A DNA stretch of 63,188 nt, filler included, from Octopus bimaculoides (taxonomy: Eukaryota): the NCBI RefSeq assembly GCF_001194135.2. It is 5 parts of 5 records of this genome, joined end to end, with 100 filler letters (N's around TTAATTAATTAA, not from the genome) between each part and the next. Parts side by side here need not be neighbours in the genome. Positions count along the whole stretch, not along the records: positions 57,891 to 63,188 come from NC_069010.1; 4 more parts are not named here. One strand, given 5' to 3'. Each line of letters begins with the position of its first letter. Position 1 is the stretch's first letter. Below the pieces are notes generated by a model. That model was not told where the DNA came from, ran no database searches, and was given only the letters and a program-made list of their open reading frames with translations. This document shows, piece by piece, positions 57,891 through 63,188 of the stretch. The translations under genes and the position numbers were made by a program.

Positions 57891-57961
<71 letters not shown>

Positions 57962-58922
57962 ATTACAGAGTACAGTGTCTGCAAGTTGATGAGTACCTCA
58001 TATTCCCCTCCATTTTCTTATTGCTATCCTTGGTACATTTAGGTATATTTGAAAAAGGAAAAGAATGATTTCAATGGTAGTTCTAATCAATTTAATTTTC
58101 TGCCAGTGCTGCCGAACTGGCTCCTGTGCAGGTGGCACGTAAAATACAACATTTGAGCGTGGCTGTTGCCAGTACCGCCTGACTGGCCTTTGTGCCGGTG
58201 GCACGTAAAAGCACCTACTACACTCTCGGAGTGGTTGGCGTTAGGAAGAGCATCCAGCTGTAGAAACTCTGCCAAATCAGATTGGAGCCTGGTGCAGCCA
58301 TCTGGTTTCACCAGTCCTCAGTCAAATCATCCAACCCATGCTAGCTTGGAAAGCGGACGTTAAACGACGATGATGATGATGAATAATATAATATAATTTT
58401 ATAGTTTGACTTACTAGATTTACAAGCCAAATTGTAAAATTATATATTATTGTTAGAAAATTAAATTGATTAGAACTACCAGTGAAGTCATTCTTTTCCT
58501 TTTCCTAATATGTGCGTGTGTACATATGTATGTATGTATGTATATGTGGTGTGATATGTATGTACTACTCAGCTGGCAAAAACGTGATGTACCCTGCATT
58601 TCAAACTGCCAGCCTTGCTTTTTCCTGTGCCATGCTAAATCTCCCTGAGAACTACAGTGTACACGTGTCTGTGGAGTGCTCAGCCACTTGCGTGTTAATC
58701 TCACAAGCAGGTAGTACCATTGATCAGATCAACTGGCACCTTCGTTCTCATTACTGATAGGCTGCCAGTCTCTCACTCTTTCTATATATATATATATACA
58801 TAGATATATACATAATTAGAAATATAATATTTCTAATTTTGCTGATCAGTGAATGAACTTCACTATGATTTACATAAGTTTGTGAAGGAGAAACAGGCTT
58901 CTCTATCCAGCTGGTAAGCTAC

Positions 58923-58965
58923 TTCAGGCTGATGACGGGCAAAGACTCAGAAACATGTCCCTGAA
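58923..58965 (+). ncRNA. Minimal type I hammerhead ribozyme, copy 1 (weakened stem II); predicted cleavage after C58959
   Basis: ttcagg-CTGATGA-cggg-caaaga-ctca-GAAA-CATG-TC-cctgaa; stem I 6 bp perfect; stem II has a C/A mismatch and a G.U pair. Confidence 0.8.
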
Positions 58966-59269
58966 TGCTGGCTAGGCTGGGTGGGGGAGCTTGTCTCCCC
59001 TTCACAAACTTAAGGACACAGTAATTGTGTCAAGGCCGACAGGAAGCGGTCCAGCTTCCTAGGGCTAAACGGCAGTAGTGTATTCCCTTCTTGGGATTGT
59101 CACATTAAGTTGATAATATACTACAACGTTATCGCACCACTACTGCTTAAATCTCTCTGAGTGATTTAGAAATATAATATTTCTAATTTTGCTAATCAGT
59201 GAATAAACTTCACTGATTATATAAGTTTGCGAGAGCTAGACAAACTTCTTCAGCCAGCTGGTAAGCTAC

Positions 59270-59312
59270 TTCAGGCTGATGATGAGCAAAGACTCAGAAA
59301 CATGTCCCTGAA
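59270..59312 (+). ncRNA. Minimal type I hammerhead ribozyme, copy 2 (intact); predicted cleavage after C59306
   Basis: ttcagg-CTGATGA-tgag-caaaga-ctca-GAAA-CATG-TC-cctgaa; all conserved core nucleotides, stem I 6 bp, stem II 4 bp, palindromic CATG in helix III. Confidence 0.88.
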
Positions 59313-59610
59313 TGCTGGCTAGGCTGGGTGGGGGAGCTTGTCTCCCCTTCACAAACTTAAGGACACAGTAATTGTGTCAAGGCCGACAGGAAGCGGTCCA
59401 GCTTCCTAGGGCTAAACAGCAGTAGTGTATTCCCTTATTGGGATTGTCACATTAAGTTGACAATATACTACAACTTTATATATACATATTTATGGGTCAA
59501 TACATATATTAGCCTATAAATGAATCTATGTATAAGTACATAAATATATATAGTTATAATAACAACCACATCAACAAATAAGGAAAATGGTAAATACTGC
59601 TAATACTTAC

Positions 59611-59758
59611 AGTTAATGTTGACAAATTGTTCTGTCAACGAGAGAACGGTTGGGGAAGCACTGCTTAGAAAGAGTCCCAGAAAGCATGATCCAAGGTAGA
59701 TACCTATGTGGTTACCACTTAGTATAATCGTTAGTGTTATAGAGACACACACACCAAC
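59611..59758 (-). CDS. MFSD4A: MFSD4-like MFS transporter exon (last found): VGVCVSITLTIILSGNHIGIYLGSCFLGLFLSSASPTVLSLTEQFVNIN
   Basis: cttcttcag|GTT acceptor, T|gtaagt donor; 148 bp, phase 0 to 1; LGLFLSS..PT.LS..E pattern of MFSD4A-like proteins. Confidence 0.8.
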
Positions 59759-60424
59759 CTGAAGAAGAGATGATGAAAAGGAGATGAAGTAGAAACAAGC
59801 AACAGAAGATGAAATGGAGACGAAACGCAGACAAGCAACTGGAGGTGAAGTGGAGACAAGCAACAGGTGATGAAGTAGAGAAAGTCAACAGGAGGCCCTG
59901 GTGTAGCTAGGTGGTGGGTGGGGGGGTGCTAGGAGCGTCCTGCCCCCCCNNNNNNNNNNNNNNNNNNNNNNNNNNNNNNNNNNNNNNNNNNNNNNNNNNN
60001 NNNNNNNNNNNNNNNNNNNNNNNNNNNNNNNNNNNNNNNNNNNNNNNNNNNNNNNNNNNNNNNNNNNNNNNNNNNNNNNNNNNNNNNNNNNNNNNNNNNN
60101 NNNNNNNNNNNNNNNNNNNNNNNNNNNNNNNNNNNNNNNNNNNNNNNNNNNNNNNNNNNNNNNNNNNNNNNNNNNNNNNNNNNNNNNNNNNNNNNNNNNN
60201 NNNNNNNNNNNNNNNNNNNNNNNNNNNNNNNNNNNNNNNNNNNNNNNNNNNNNNNNNNNNNNNNNNNNNNNNNNNNNNNNNNNNNNNNNNNNNNNNNNNN
60301 NNNNNNNNNNNNNNNNNNNNNNNNNNNNNNNNNNNNNNNNNNNNNNNNNNNNNNNNNNNNNNNNNNNNNNNNNNNNNNNNNNNNNNNNNNNNNNNNNNNN
60401 NNNTGATGATGATGATAGTGATGA

Positions 60425-60458
<34 letters not shown>

Positions 60459-60664
60459 GGTGGTGGTGGTGGTTGTGGTGGTGATGACAAGGAGGAGGAG
60501 GAGGGTATCCAGCCATAAAAAGCCAAGCCAAATCAGACGACAGAACTCAATAGAAAATCTGCCTCAACAAACTCCGTCCGACCTATGCAAACATGGAAAA
60601 CGGAGCGTTGAATGATGGTGATTGATTGGAAAAATGACAAAAGAATGACGTGGAATATACTTAC

Positions 60665-60745
60665 AATGTTAACAAGCAACATGAAAGCAGCGGTGAACCT
60701 CGACGCCAACACAATGGCAATGAGACGGCCAAGAGCAAAAGTACC
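60665..60745 (-). CDS. MFSD4A: MFSD4-like MFS transporter exon: GTFALGRLIAIVLASRFTAAFMLLVNI
   Basis: tattttcag|GGT acceptor, ATT|gtaagt donor; 81 bp, phase 0 to 0; FWG...LGRL motif of MFS TM8. Confidence 0.8.
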
Positions 60746-60932
60746 CTGAAAATACAAGACATGAGTGTAATTAAGAAAAATGAAAACACCATATATGGGT
60801 ATGTGTATATTTATACAGCCTACAGCCACGTGTGTGTATACAGTCATGGCCAAAAGTTTGAAATGTAGGTCTGAAAATTAGAAATTCCAAAATGCCCAAA
60901 ATTATATTTAATTTGCAATTTATTATTATTTA

Positions 60933-61132
60933 CAGTTCTATATTTAAGAGATGAGGAATTATTTACATTATTTACATTTGATGGCTATTTGTCCTCATCT
61001 TGTTTGTTGTTAACACGTTTCGGCTGTTATACCCTCCAGCCTTTATCAAGGGCATGTGGTGTAGCGGTTAAGAGTGCAGGCTACTAACCCCAAGATTCTG
61101 AGTTCGTCCCAGGCAGTGACCTGAATAATAAT
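60933..61132. mobile_element. Same SINE family: inverted tail (60933-61050, -) fused to tRNA-like head (61051-61132, +)
   Basis: cagttctatatttaagagatgagg...ccctccagcc followed by ggcatgtggtgtagcggttaagagtgcaggctactaacccc. Confidence 0.8.
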
Positions 61133-61278
61133 GGTTGTGTGGTATTATGGTTTTGGGAGTTACAATAATGCTTGCCTAGAGATTGCAGTGACATGAAACT
61201 TGTAGTGTTGGTAGTGAAGTGGTGTTGATCTACCGTTAAGGTGGTAGCAGAGTATTAGTCCTGGACAGAGATACTCAC

Positions 61279-61371
61279 CCAAAAACAAGCATTGAGTACG
61301 GCCCCTTCTGACTGCTTTAGTCCTGTCACAGATTTCACAGAATACGAATATACATAGCCTCCGTAAGATGA
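61279..61371 (-). CDS. MFSD4A: MFSD4-like MFS transporter exon: SSYGGYVYSYSVKSVTGLKQSEGAVLNACFW
   Basis: tttttttcag|TCA acceptor, TGG|gtgagt donor; 93 bp, phase 0 to 0; YG.F/YVYSYAV...L...FW pattern typical of the MFSD4 family. Confidence 0.8.
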
Positions 61372-61761
61372 CTGAAAAAAAAATGGAGAAAAAGTTACAG
61401 TAAATGGGTGTATATATAATGAATAAGGTGTACATAGGATTGAAATCAGTATATATTGTTGAGTTAGAGATCTCGGTGTTTGTGAACATGTGGTTGAATC
61501 GGTGTGTTGGTTGAACTGTCGATGCATATGCCCAAGTGTGTGCATCTAGAATCTCAGATCGAGAATTTCTGGAATGTCTTACAGATCTTTATTGTGCCAC
61601 TAATAGATTGGATCTGGAGAATCCGCATCAGTTTCTTTTGCTTTTTGTTTCCCATGAAACCGAGTTTTTATAAGTTTTTGTGCAAACTTGTTAGGTACAT
61701 AACCTGATGCACCTATATTGATATATATGTATGTGTACATATATATGCGAGAAAAACTTAC

Positions 61762-61880
61762 CTGTAAGCCATCAAATAAAAACATGGCCCCAGCAGCAAG
61801 AAGTGTCAGAATAATGGTTTGATTTGATCCACAAGTGAAACACCTCGAAGTAAATGATTTGCCTTCATCTTTTGGAATTT
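61762..61880 (-). CDS. MFSD4A: MFSD4-like MFS transporter exon: IPKDEGKSFTSRCFTCGSNQTIILTLLAAGAMFLFDGLQ
   Basis: tttcttttag|AA acceptor, CAG|gtaagt donor; 119 bp; TM segment ending FLFDGLQ; phase-compatible with next exon. Orthology to MFSD4A vs MFSD4B-like is by recalled similarity only. Confidence 0.75.
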
Positions 61881-62904
61881 CTAAAAGAAAAATTATAAAT
61901 ATAAAAATCATAAGTATAAAAAAATTTATATAAATATCAAAACATGTGTGTGTGTGTTAGCAAGGGCATCCAGCCATAGAAACCATGCCAAATCAGACTG
62001 GAGTCTGATGTAGCCCCACCCCACCAGATGGAGTAATTTTTTTGCTGAATTATCTATCACTTTATATATACATATACATATACATACATATATGTCTGTG
62101 TTTAGCTCTTCAAAACGCCATTTTTCTCCGTGTTTTTCTCCTTGTTTCCGTATTCATTTTGTTGAAGAGCGTAGCTCGAAACGTCAAAGACTTTCCGTAT
62201 TCCCGAGCGTTATACTAATACATCCTTTTGTTATTTACACCACCTGTCCTCGTCTGTTGTTGTTTTTTCATACATTCTCCCATATATATATATATATATA
62301 TANNNNNNNNNNNNNNNNNNNNNNNNNNNNNNNNNNNNNNNNNNNNNNNNNNNNNNNNNNNNNNNNNNNNNNNNNNNNNNNNNNNNNNNNNNNNNNNNNN
62401 NNNNNNNNNNNNNNNNNNNNNNNNNNNNNNNNNNNNNNNNNNNNNNNNNNNNNNNNNNNNNNNNNNNNNNNNNNNNNNNNNNNNNNNNNNNNNNNNNGGG
62501 GGGGGGGGTTTCACAAAGCAGCTTTATCACAATCAACACCCCATTCTCTTTCTAGGTCGCACAAACTAAGTACTTCTGACCCAAAGTGGGCACAGGTGGC
62601 GCCGGCGGCATAGGCGGCAGCAATGGTGGTAGTGGTGGTATAGTGGTGGTATGGCAGCAGTGGTGGTATGGTGGCAGTGGTGGTATGGTGGTAGCGGCAG
62701 CGGAGTGTGATGGTTGTAACCAGCGAAACTGGTTCAGTTTCTAGACCAATCCAATTTGGAGAGAGAGAAAATGAGCAAAAATAAGAGAGAGAAAGAGAGA
62801 GAGAGAAGGAGAGAGAGAAAGAACTAGTGTTAAATTATCCATGGTGTCTGTTTCTGGAGCCAGGCTCCATATATGCTTATTATATATATCAAATGTGGAT
62901 GTAT

Positions 62905-63083
62905 ATATATATAATTTATATAAGGGCATTCACTGTATAGTAATGCCTCAGGCTTAGAGGGACTAAATAAGTCAAAAACTACCAAAAAATAAGCTTATTT
63001 TTTGGTAGTTTTTGACTTATTTAGTCCCTCTGAGCGTGAAGCATTACTATATAGTTAATGCCCTTATATAAAATTATATATAT
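62905..63083. repeat. ~180-bp palindrome with a perfect 76-bp core (62956-63031) centred on AAGCTT
   Basis: Base-by-base symmetry about 62993/62994, no spacer; outer arms carry mismatches. Confidence 0.92.
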
Positions 63084-63188
63084 TTATGGAAAAAAATGAT
63101 GAGTTTTTTTTTTCCTTATGAGGTTTTTTCACGCTGACTACTTGATAAATTCTTATAAAGATTTTATCCTATATTATATTATGTATAT

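What the first reader, a model, noticed from the sequence alone, without database searches (positions are those of the whole stretch)
58816..59474. Candidate non-LTR retrozyme: tandem ~350-bp units, each with a minimal hammerhead ribozyme, releasing a 347-nt monomer
Seen: 1.9 tandem copies, each with ttcagg-CTGATGA-[stem II]-GAAA-CATG-TC-cctgaa; copy 2 has a complete core and perfect stems I and II. Predicted cuts after 58959 and 59306 would excise 347 nt; no ORF of 60+ codons in the array. Established: metazoan non-LTR retrozymes (cnidarians, bivalves, amphibians) are 170-400-nt tandem repeats with one minimal type I hammerhead per unit that yield abundant circRNAs; helix III with a palindromic tetranucleotide works through dimerisation; they are thought to borrow Penelope RT. 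Inference: this is a cephalopod member of that viroid-like class. I am not aware of one described in octopus but cannot check the literature. Alternative: a Penelope pLTR tandem without internal sequence.
Basis: partly seen in the sequence, partly recalled or inferred. Interest (0 to 1): 0.92.

Follow-up and report, generated by a model that had tools for sequence, protein, structure and literature searches.

The report
Tandem repeat carrying hammerhead ribozymes
A 347-base non-coding unit, present in 1.9 head-to-tail copies, has a self-cleaving hammerhead ribozyme motif in each copy; it looks like a small "retrozyme" retroelement of the kind known from mussels, corals and salamanders, so it is a new example and not a new kind of thing.

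Summary
TRF finds one 347-bp tandem repeat of 1.9 copies at 58816-59479. Each copy has a type I hammerhead motif at the stated coordinates, and cuts after 58959 and 59306 would release exactly 347 nt. Chance does not explain the motif: a strict descriptor gave 0 hits in 3000 shuffles and in 40 Mb of simulated sequence. Rfam's Hammerhead_HH9 model aligns end to end with both copies (31.0 and 25.3 bits, below the gathering score of 52).

The ribozyme is not fully "minimal". Helices I and II and loop 2 are canonical for metazoan type I. Only helix III is minimal: one A-U pair plus CAUG, giving the palindrome ACAUGU, as in newt and axolotl ribozymes that cleave as dimers.

The monomer is strongly self-paired (z = -6.4), has 42% GC and has no ORF. 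The array sits in a TA-rich microsatellite with an 11-12-nt flanking repeat, and the un-duplicated 30-33 nt matches the size of the Penelope "tail".

It meets the published in-silico criteria for a non-LTR retrozyme, now regarded as a Penelope pLTR derivative. Cleavage, circular RNA, copy number and host species could not be tested. I rate it a new member of a known kind, of modest interest.

The parts
58804..58814 (.). Left flanking repeat ATATATACATA, directly abutting the array. It is either a candidate target-site duplication or part of the 12-nt TA-rich minisatellite 58783-58814.
   Evidence: Sequence; TRF 12-nt period at 58783-58814; longest shared flank word of 12 nt, reached in 3 of 5000 shuffles.
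58816..59162 (+). Unit copy 1, one full 347-nt period.
   Evidence: TRF; alignment.
59163..59479 (+). Unit copy 2. It lacks the last 30-33 nt of the period.
   Evidence: TRF; alignment.
58816..58836 (+). AT-rich perfect palindrome TTAGAAATAT-A-ATATTTCTAA at the 5' edge of the unit, repeated at 59166-59186.
   Evidence: Sequence; inverted repeats I9 and I23.
58914..58982 (+). Hammerhead 1, type I. Core CUGAUGA 58929-58935; helix II 58936-58949, with a C.A closing mismatch and one G.U pair; GAAA 58950-58953; helix III palindrome ACAUGU 58953-58958; C17 at 58959, with the predicted cut after it.
   Evidence: Rfam HH9 at 25.3 bits, E = 7.4e-5, model positions 1-77; sequence.
59261..59329 (+). Hammerhead 2, type I, with a complete core. 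Helix I 6 bp (59270-59275 with 59307-59312); helix II 4 bp (59283-59296); helix III ACAUGU 59300-59305; C17 at 59306, with the predicted cut after it.
   Evidence: Rfam HH9 at 31.0 bits, E = 1.1e-6; own descriptor.
58960..59306 (+). Predicted 347-nt monomer released by the two cuts. It would be the precursor of the circular RNA.
   Evidence: MFE -125.5 kcal/mol against -87.8 +/- 5.9 for shuffles, z = -6.4; circular fold -121.4 kcal/mol.
58875..58911 (+). 5' arm of the long hairpin that holds hammerhead 1 at its tip. Its copy 2 counterpart is 59222-59258. This arm is the hypervariable part of the unit.
   Evidence: Inverted repeat I2, 37 nt and 81% complementary; hairpin 58870-59015 folds at -72.2 kcal/mol, z = -7.3; 17 of the 25 differences between copies lie here.
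58976..59012 (+). 3' arm of the long hairpin. Its copy 2 counterpart is 59323-59359, and the arm is identical in the two copies.
59133..59165 (+). Segment of about 30-33 nt present once only, between the two 317-nt repeated blocks. It is the size of the Penelope 'tail'.
   Evidence: Alignment; tail defined in PMC8557442 and PMC11167929.
59478..59488 (.). Right flanking repeat ATATATACATA, directly abutting the end of the array.
   Evidence: Sequence.

Best explanation
This is a dimeric (1.9-copy) insertion of a small non-coding retroelement of the metazoan non-LTR retrozyme class, that is, a non-autonomous derivative of Penelope-like-element terminal repeats.

Shown from the sequence:
- Each 347-nt unit encodes, on the + strand, a type I hammerhead with a canonical helix I, helix II and loop 2, and a one-base-pair helix III inside the palindrome ACAUGU.
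- The ribozyme sits at the tip of a hairpin of about 146 nt. That hairpin is markedly more stable in the + RNA than in the - RNA.
- The unit has no ORF.
- The array lies in a TA-rich microsatellite, between 11-nt direct repeats.

Inferred by analogy with the coral, mussel and axolotl elements:
- A read-through + strand transcript lets the two hammerheads pair through ACAUGU into a double hammerhead.
- A host RtcB-type tRNA ligase circularises this RNA.
- The circle, or a multimeric transcript, is copied by the reverse transcriptase and GIY-YIG endonuclease of an autonomous Penelope-like element. This yields cDNA longer than one unit that inserts at (TA)n-type targets.

This copy may or may not still be active.
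For: - Tandem repeat: period 347, 1.9 copies.
- Both hammerheads are at the same position within the unit, and the core is complete in both.
- Rfam HH9 aligns over its full length at 31.0 and 25.3 bits, E = 1e-6 and 7e-5.
- The motif is far beyond chance: 0 strict hits in 3000 shuffles and in 40 Mb of simulated sequence.
- A 1-bp helix III is unfavourable (+4.7 to +6.3 kcal/mol), whereas the palindrome duplex gives -6.0 kcal/mol. The axolotl HHR_Amex1 has the same architecture; it cleaves poorly as a monomer and well as a dimer (PMC7229834).
- The monomer fold has z = -6.4. The hairpin around the ribozyme has z = -7.3 and -4.0.
- The + strand hairpin is 18 kcal/mol more stable than the - strand hairpin in copy 1, with 8 G.U pairs against 3. 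This fits selection on the ribozyme-sense RNA.
- No ORF. GC is 42% and there are no Pol III A or B boxes.
- TA-microsatellite insertion site with an 11-12-nt flanking repeat. Penelope-like elements favour microsatellite and (TA)n targets (PMC8557442).
- The un-duplicated 30-33 nt matches the 30-40-bp Penelope 'tail' that lies between the two reverse-transcription start sites (PMC11167929).
- The locus meets the operational definition of an 'active' retrozyme: a TRF repeat plus two consecutive units whose hammerheads fold below -5 kcal/mol. The values here are -7.5 and -9.7.
Against: - There is only one locus and only 1.9 copies. No second family member could be retrieved, so there is no covariation evidence and no copy number.
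- Both Rfam scores are well under the gathering score of 52.
- The 10.1-11.1 pair is U-A in copy 2 and a C.A mismatch in copy 1, instead of the nearly universal G-C. From my own knowledge of hammerhead mutagenesis, this would be expected to lower activity.
- In the predicted MFE folds, AUG of the core pairs with CAU of helix III, which is an inactive conformer.
- No expression or cleavage data exist here.
- The flanking repeat lies in low-complexity DNA that already carries two copies of the 12-mer on the left. It may therefore not be a true target-site duplication.
- An assembly gap 470 nt downstream (59950-60403) could hide coding sequence.
Confidence: 0.72

Rival explanations
1. This is an internally deleted Penelope-like element, or a solo partial tandem of its pseudo-LTRs. 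The two 317-nt blocks would be pLTRs and the 30-33 nt between them would be all that remains of the element. It would not belong to an independently amplifying retrozyme family.
For: - There are only two repeat blocks, separated by a tail-sized segment (tail in PMC11167929).
- The insertion site is a TA microsatellite (PMC8557442).
- Hammerheads are universal in the pLTRs of canonical Penelope-like elements (PMC4209133).
- Retrozyme consensus sequences in Xenopus are sister to pLTRs (bioRxiv 10.64898/2026.07.22.740005).
- An assembly gap lies 470 nt downstream.
Against: - The hammerhead has the canonical helix I, helix II and loop 2 architecture. PMC7229834 assigns that architecture to retrozymes, whereas Penelope pLTRs carry min-HHRs with a long helix II, a short helix I and no helix III.
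- No RT or endonuclease ORF or remnant was seen anywhere in the 4.6 kb of readable sequence.
- The unit length of 347 nt is typical of retrozymes: 350-390 nt in mussel and 330-350 nt in axolotl.
Confidence: 0.2
2. This is a dead relic. It would be a genuine retrozyme-type insertion whose ribozymes no longer cleave, so no circular RNA is made from this locus today.
For: - Copy 1 has a C.A mismatch closing helix II and one G.U pair.
- Neither copy has G10.1-C11.1.
- The copies differ at 8% of positions.
- The 5' hairpin arm of copy 2 has lost pairing: -57.8 against -72.2 kcal/mol.
Against: - The catalytic core, helix I and the helix III palindrome are intact and identical in both copies.
- Outside the 47-column variable stretch the copies are about 97% identical, so the insertion is not old.
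Confidence: 0.35
3. This is a chance hammerhead-like string inside an ordinary local tandem duplication or satellite, with no ribozyme function.
For: - The relaxed hammerhead descriptor does occur by chance, at about 500 per Gb of double-stranded sequence.
- Rfam scores are below the gathering score.
Against: - The strict motif was never seen in 3000 shuffles or in 40 Mb of simulation.
- The HH9 covariance-model alignment covers the full model, including the outer helix and loop 2.
- The motif sits at the apex of a 146-nt hairpin with z = -7.3.
- It coincides with a retrozyme-sized repeat, a palindromic helix III and a Penelope-type target site.
Confidence: 0.03
4. This is a host-gene regulatory ribozyme, like the intronic HH9 hammerheads of amniotes, acting on the pre-mRNA of the neighbouring gene.
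For: - The best Rfam match is the HH9 family.
- Exons of a spliced gene lie 1.2-2.4 kb away.
Against: - The gene is on the - strand and the ribozymes are on the + strand, so they are not part of that transcript.
- Two copies in a transposon-like tandem unit with flanking repeats argue for a mobile element.
Confidence: 0.02

Closest known systems
Amphibian satellite 2 / axolotl non-LTR retrozymes (Rtz_331 with HHR_Amex1; PMC7229834)
   Same: Tandem unit of about 330-350 bp with one type I hammerhead per unit. Helix III is a single base pair capped by a palindromic tetraloop. Helices I and II are canonical. Cleavage is expected to depend on dimer formation. The monomer is highly self-paired.
   Different: The axolotl family has about 60,000 motifs in long arrays and keeps all the loop 1-loop 2 tertiary nucleotides and G10.1-C11.1. 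Here there are only 1.9 copies, the 10.1-11.1 pair is U-A or C.A, and loop 2 is CAAAGA. PMC7229834 describes dimer-dependent helix III as typical of vertebrates and not of invertebrates, so if the host is a mollusc this is an amphibian-style ribozyme in an invertebrate.
Mussel (Mytilus galloprovincialis) non-LTR retrozymes (PMC7229834)
   Same: The repeat size of 350-390 bp is close to 347. Both have a type I hammerhead, no ORF and a self-paired monomer, and both co-exist with Penelope-like elements.
   Different: The mussel ribozymes cleave as monomers (kobs about 0.1 per min) and lack most tertiary-contact nucleotides. They number about 5000 copies, and abundant circular RNA has been demonstrated. 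None of this is known for the present locus, and no sequence similarity could be tested.
Rfam Hammerhead_HH9 (RF02275), clan CL00010
   Same: The alignment covers the full model: outer helix, internal loop ending in AC, 6-bp helix I, CUGAUGA, 4-bp helix II with a CAAA-A type 6-nt loop, GAAAC...GUC.
   Different: Scores are 31.0 and 25.3 bits against a gathering score of 52. HH9 has a helix III of 3 bp plus a 5-nt loop, which is reduced here to 1 bp plus 4 nt. HH9 members are single-copy intronic motifs and not tandem repeat units.
Min-HHRs in pseudo-LTRs of Penelope-like elements (PMC4209133)
   Same: Type I topology, a palindromic helix III region, a proposed dimeric mode of action, location in direct repeats, a partial-tandem genomic arrangement, a microsatellite target and a tail of 30-40 bp.
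   Different: [quoted passage not shown] They flank an RT/GIY-YIG ORF of about 3 kb. Here helices I and II have the canonical sizes and no ORF lies between the repeats.

Membership tests
Hammerhead ribozyme, type I (Rfam clan CL00010) | Conserved catalytic core: C3-U4-G5-A6-N7-G8-A9, G12-A13-A14, A15.1/U16.1, and H17 at the cleavage site | tested here: met
   CUGAUGA ... GAAA ... U-C is present in both copies, with C17 at 58959 and 59306.
Hammerhead ribozyme, type I (Rfam clan CL00010) | Three helices around the core, with helix I open (type I topology) | tested here: met
   Helix I is 6 bp and extends through an internal loop into an outer helix. Helix II is 4 bp in copy 2 and 3 bp plus a C.A mismatch in copy 1. 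Helix III is 1 bp plus CAUG.
Hammerhead ribozyme, type I (Rfam clan CL00010) | G10.1-C11.1 base pair at the base of helix II | tested here: not met
   The pair is U-A in copy 2 and C.A in copy 1. The alternative register, with a bulged U and a G-C pair, would need an extra A before G12.
Hammerhead ribozyme, type I (Rfam clan CL00010) | Score at or above the curated gathering threshold of an Rfam hammerhead model | tested here: not met
   The best model is RF02275, at 31.0 and 25.3 bits against a gathering score of 52. Scans of longer slices gave no hit. The E-values of 1e-6 and 7e-5 are nonetheless significant for the sequence searched.
Hammerhead ribozyme, type I (Rfam clan CL00010) | Site-specific self-cleavage | not testable with these tools
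   This needs in vitro transcription of monomer and dimer constructs.
Metazoan non-LTR retrozyme (PMC7229834; bioRxiv 10.64898/2026.07.22.740005) | Short head-to-tail tandem repeat of about 150-450 bp | tested here: met
   TRF period 347, 1.9 copies.
Metazoan non-LTR retrozyme (PMC7229834; bioRxiv 10.64898/2026.07.22.740005) | At least two consecutive units, each with a complete type I hammerhead folding below -5 kcal/mol | tested here: met
   There are two motifs 347 nt apart. The 44-nt motifs fold at -7.5 and -9.7 kcal/mol. Criterion quoted. Caveat: helix II of copy 1 has a C.A mismatch.
Metazoan non-LTR retrozyme (PMC7229834; bioRxiv 10.64898/2026.07.22.740005) | Non-coding, with low GC (<45-50%) and no LTR, PBS or PPT | tested here: met
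   ORFs are at most 31 aa. GC is 42%. PBS and PPT were not specifically searched for.
Metazoan non-LTR retrozyme (PMC7229834; bioRxiv 10.64898/2026.07.22.740005) | Monomer RNA predicted to be stable and highly self-paired | tested here: met
   MFE -125.5 kcal/mol, z = -6.4; none of 100 shuffles folded as well.
Metazoan non-LTR retrozyme (PMC7229834; bioRxiv 10.64898/2026.07.22.740005) | Multi-copy dispersed family in the genome, co-occurring with Penelope-like elements | not testable with these tools
   No animal genome is reachable. The six-frame protein trick and five DNA pattern scans found nothing. Penelope elements are reported as abundant in octopus genomes (PMC8967140), but the host species of this piece was not verified.
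Metazoan non-LTR retrozyme (PMC7229834; bioRxiv 10.64898/2026.07.22.740005) | Expressed as linear and circular RNA of unit length | not testable with these tools
   No transcriptome access.
Autonomous Penelope-like element (pLTR-ORF-pLTR) | RT plus GIY-YIG ORF between the direct repeats | tested here: not met
   Only 30-33 nt separate the repeated blocks. No ORF of 60 aa or more lies in the array. Nothing RT-like was seen among the ORFs of the piece by inspection; these were not scanned against Pfam.
Autonomous Penelope-like element (pLTR-ORF-pLTR) | Insertion bias for microsatellites such as (TA)n, and an optional 30-40-bp tail at one end | tested here: inconclusive
   The array is embedded in a TA-rich 12-nt minisatellite. 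The un-duplicated segment of 30-33 nt is tail-sized. Both are consistent with mobilisation by Penelope machinery, but they are single observations.

The most novel reading that the evidence does not exclude
This would be an active cephalopod retrozyme whose RNA diversifies at the RNA level. The 5' arm of the long hairpin that clamps the hammerhead is hypervariable between two adjacent copies: 17 of the 25 differences fall in 47 columns. The partner arm is invariant, and pairing is partly kept through G.U pairs that exist only in the + RNA. This could record editing, RNA-to-RNA copying or template switching within a heterogeneous circular-RNA population, later fixed in DNA by Penelope reverse transcription. 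De la Pena and colleagues raised this possibility for the mussel and plant retrozymes. The dimer-dependent, amphibian-type helix III would then also be a first for an invertebrate retrozyme.
Probability: 0.07. Interest if true: 0.7.

Novelty: new member of a known kind. Interest (0 to 1): 0.3.

Why it matters
It would also give a compact, experimentally tractable 347-nt example in which an amphibian-style, dimer-only helix III occurs outside vertebrates. Its site features (a TA microsatellite, a tail-sized leftover and an 11-nt flanking repeat) add a small piece of circumstantial support to the current view that animal retrozymes are mobilised by Penelope-like elements. By itself, one dimeric copy with slightly off-consensus ribozymes is an annotation-level finding. 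Repeats of this class are already reported from molluscs to arthropods.

Tried and rejected
1. Rfam scans of the whole piece and of a 441-nt slice at E <= 10 gave no hammerhead. This was a filter artefact. The 81-nt slices gave full-length HH9 alignments.
2. To find more family copies, I searched a six-frame concatenated translation of the unit against 5.8 billion predicted proteins, hoping that spurious ORFs had been called on animal contigs. There were no hits.
3. Exact-pattern DNA scans with a family-specific and a helix II-degenerate hammerhead pattern found nothing. I ran two scans in metagenome contigs, two in viral contigs and one in prokaryotic genome contigs. These collections hold essentially no animal DNA, so the result says nothing about copy number.
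4. To fetch an orthologous (possibly empty) site, I assembled 97 aa from three neighbouring exons and searched for them. The only hit was a 50%-identical 76-aa ORF on a 555-nt ENA contig, so this was a dead end. Pfam gave nothing for the exons.
5. I tested whether the downstream region 59560-59949 is a diverged partial unit. Only 16-17-nt matches appeared, scoring 29 against a shuffle maximum of 28, which is marginal.
6. I looked for an ADAR hyper-editing signature in the variable arm and rejected it as a clean explanation. The A/G differences run in both directions, and four of the differences are transversions.
7. I looked for Pol III A and B boxes, as in SINE-like hammerhead repeats, and found none. 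There is a TTTT run in each unit.
8. ARAGORN found no tRNA gene in the piece.
9. Literature searches combining hammerhead, retrozyme or ribozyme with octopus or cephalopod found no description of such an element in cephalopods in the held library. The paper by Lunse, Weinberg and Breaker (2017) was not available.
Full report
**Observation.** The readable piece is 57891-63188 and contains two assembly gaps. TRF reports a single long-period tandem repeat at 58816-59479, with period 347, 1.9 copies, 92% matches and score 1165. Pairwise alignment puts copy 1 at 58816-59162 and copy 2 at 59163-59479. Copy 2 stops 30-33 nt short of a full period, so the locus can be written as 317 nt, then about 30 nt, then 317 nt.

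C17 falls at 58959 and 59306, so the cut-to-cut product 58960-59306 is exactly 347 nt. No ORF in the array exceeds 31 aa, and no stop-free frame inside the array exceeds 52 aa.

**Is the motif more than chance?** I wrote a hammerhead descriptor requiring the core boxes, helix II, A15.1...U16.1-H17 and helix I. It finds copy 2 with a 6-bp helix I and a 4-bp helix II. Copy 1 fails only because helix II closes with a C.A mismatch.

In 3000 dinucleotide-preserving shuffles of the 4649 readable bases, the relaxed descriptor hit 0.001 times per shuffle and the strict one never hit. In 40 Mb of first-order Markov sequence there were 10 relaxed hits and 0 strict hits. A relaxed hammerhead alone would therefore be unremarkable on a genome scale, at about 500 per Gb. 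The strict motif, at the same position in two adjacent retrozyme-sized units, is not a chance event.

**Rfam.** Scans of the whole piece and of a 441-nt slice reported no hammerhead even at E <= 10. This was a filter loss. On 81-nt slices, Hammerhead_HH9 (RF02275) aligns over its whole length (positions 1-77). Copy 2 (59261-59329) scores 31.0 bits with E = 1.1e-6, and copy 1 (58914-58982) scores 25.3 bits with E = 7.4e-5. Both are below the gathering score of 52, so this is significant similarity and not curated membership.

**Anatomy of the ribozyme.** The HH9 alignment corrects one point of the finding. Apart from helix III, this is the canonical metazoan type I design and not the "min-HHR" of Penelope elements. 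The features are:
- an outer helix (AGCUA/UGGCU in the Rfam alignment, or AGC/GCU with a 5' UAC loop in the MFE fold);
- an internal loop;
- a 6-bp helix I;
- CUGAUGA;
- a 4-bp helix II capped by the 6-nt loop CAAAGA (HH9 consensus CAAAAA);
- GAAAC...GUC.

This matches Cervera and de la Pena's description of canonical metazoan hammerheads: helix I of 6 bp, helix II of 4 bp, and helix III of 1-2 bp with a small palindromic loop. Their Penelope min-HHRs instead have a long helix II, a short helix I and no helix III (PMC4209133).

Helix III here is one A-U pair around CAUG, so A15.1 to U16.1 reads ACAUGU, a 6-nt palindrome. Forming the 1-bp helix III costs +4.7 to +6.3 kcal/mol in the monomer, while two copies can form a -6.0 kcal/mol intermolecular helix. 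The axolotl HHR_Amex1 has the same arrangement. It cleaves only 6% in an hour as a monomer but cleaves efficiently as a dimer (PMC7229834).

There are two departures from consensus. Position 10.1-11.1 is U-A in copy 2 and C.A in copy 1, not G-C. Copy 1 also has a G.U pair in helix II. From general knowledge of the hammerhead, I expect these changes to reduce activity but not necessarily to abolish it.

**Anatomy of the unit.** The predicted 347-nt monomer folds at -125.5 kcal/mol, against -87.8 +/- 5.9 for shuffles (z = -6.4). As a circle it folds at -121.4 kcal/mol.

The hammerhead sits at the apex of a long hairpin. The 37-nt arms are 58875-58911 and 58976-59012, 81% complementary. The 146-nt hairpin folds at -72.2 kcal/mol (z = -7.3) in copy 1 and at -57.8 kcal/mol (z = -4.0) in copy 2. 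In copy 1 the + strand hairpin is 18 kcal/mol more stable than its reverse complement, with 8 G.U pairs against 3. That is what selection on the ribozyme-sense RNA would produce. With only two copies, this is suggestive and nothing more.

The unit has 42% GC and no Pol III A or B box. Its 5' edge is a perfect AT-rich palindrome (58816-58836).

**An unexplained feature.** Of the 25 differences between the copies, 17 lie in 47 columns, which form exactly the 5' arm of the long hairpin. The 3' arm is identical in the two copies (P about 3e-9 against a uniform spread). Elsewhere the copies are about 97% identical. The changes are not a clean ADAR signature, because the A/G differences go in both directions and four differences are transversions. 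Template switching within a heterogeneous RNA population, gene conversion, or a cruciform mutational hot spot all remain possible.

**Insertion site.**
- The array is embedded in TA-rich low-complexity DNA. A 12-nt minisatellite lies on its left (58783-58814).
- The 11-mer ATATATACATA abuts both ends of the array, at 58804-58814 and 59478-59488. The longest shared flank word is 12 nt, which was reached in 3 of 5000 shuffles.
- This is either a target-site duplication or an insertion between minisatellite units.
- Penelope-like elements show insertion bias for microsatellites, including (TA)n. They often carry a 30-40-bp "tail" at one end (PMC8557442), now explained by two adjacent internal reverse-transcription start sites (PMC11167929).
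- The 30-33 nt that this array does not duplicate (59133-59165) is that size.

These are circumstantial links to Penelope machinery.

**Interpretation.** The locus satisfies all the sequence-level criteria for metazoan non-LTR retrozymes. It is a short tandem repeat in which two consecutive units each carry a complete type I hammerhead folding below -5 kcal/mol (-7.5 and -9.7). It is non-coding, has low GC and has a highly self-paired monomer (criteria in PMC7229834, and bioRxiv 10.64898/2026.07.22.740005).

The mechanism I consider most likely is the published one, inferred here and not shown:
1. A + strand read-through transcript is made.
2. The two ribozymes pair into a double hammerhead and cut after 58959 and 59306.
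3. A host RtcB-type tRNA ligase circularises the 347-nt product.
4. A Penelope RT/endonuclease reverse-transcribes it and inserts it.

A 2026 preprint argues that animal retrozymes are themselves pLTR derivatives, so the two readings largely merge. The canonical helix I and II architecture and the absence of any RT remnant in the piece favour the retrozyme label. The locus may equally be an inactive relic.

**What could not be done.** No animal genome or transcriptome is reachable with these tools. A six-frame protein query, five DNA pattern scans and an attempt to fetch the orthologous locus through neighbouring exons all failed. As a result, copy number, covariation, linkage to Penelope ORFs, expression and the host species remain untested. 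Penelope elements are reported as abundant in octopus genomes (PMC8967140).

**Novelty.** Searches of the held literature found no description of hammerheads or retrozymes in cephalopods. However, type I hammerheads in short tandem repeats are stated to occur "from molluscs to arthropods", and mussel retrozymes of 350-390 bp are well characterised. This is a new member of a known kind. Its one mildly unusual trait is an amphibian-style, dimer-dependent helix III in what is presumably an invertebrate. I put interest at about 0.3.

Noticed in passing
window 58045-58511: Inverted repeats of 57 nt (58045-58101 and 58455-58511, 93% complementary) bracket a SINE-like insert at 58101 to about 58380. 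The insert ends in (GAT)n and contains an internal 44-nt direct repeat (58101-58144 and 58167-58210). It looks like a SINE nested in a foldback or MITE-like element.
   Followed up: partly
window 58240-58299, 61956-62015, about 60505-60620: The same SINE tail sequence (GCATCCAGC...GCCAAATCAGA.TGGAG) recurs. The copies at 58240-58299 and 61956-62015 are 83% identical, and a further fragment follows the first gap. A tRNA-like stretch at about 61054-61125 is not called by ARAGORN.
   Followed up: partly
window 62915-63072: A 158-nt foldback made of two abutting 79-nt arms, 94% complementary. It gives sub-threshold hits to plant miRNA precursor models (MIR5070 and others) on both strands. It is most likely a MITE-like palindrome and not a microRNA gene.
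   Followed up: partly
window 60677-61875, minus strand: Three phase-compatible exons with canonical AG/GT splice sites lie at 61875-61767, 61364-61272 and 60757-60677. They encode about 97 aa of a hydrophobic protein. Pfam gives no hit, and the only database relative is a 50%-identical 76-aa ENA ORF. The ribozyme array lies further along the gene's direction of transcription, on the opposite strand, so it may be intronic and antisense.
   Followed up: partly
window 59760-59949: A 25-nt-period minisatellite (59760-59894) has units that resemble the 5' arm of the hammerhead hairpin. The 17-mer 59845-59861 is 94% complementary to 58989-59005. It is followed by a G-rich stretch resembling 58970-58990, which runs into the assembly gap. 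The local alignment score is only marginally above shuffles.
   Followed up: partly
window 58865-58906 versus 59215-59253: Of the 25 differences between the two repeat units, 17 cluster in the 5' arm of the long hairpin, while the partner arm is identical in both copies (P about 3e-9). The cause is unexplained.
   Followed up: partly
window 59950-60403 and 62303-62497: Two runs of N (assembly gaps) lie inside the piece. The first is only about 470 nt downstream of the array and could hide relevant sequence.
   Followed up: no
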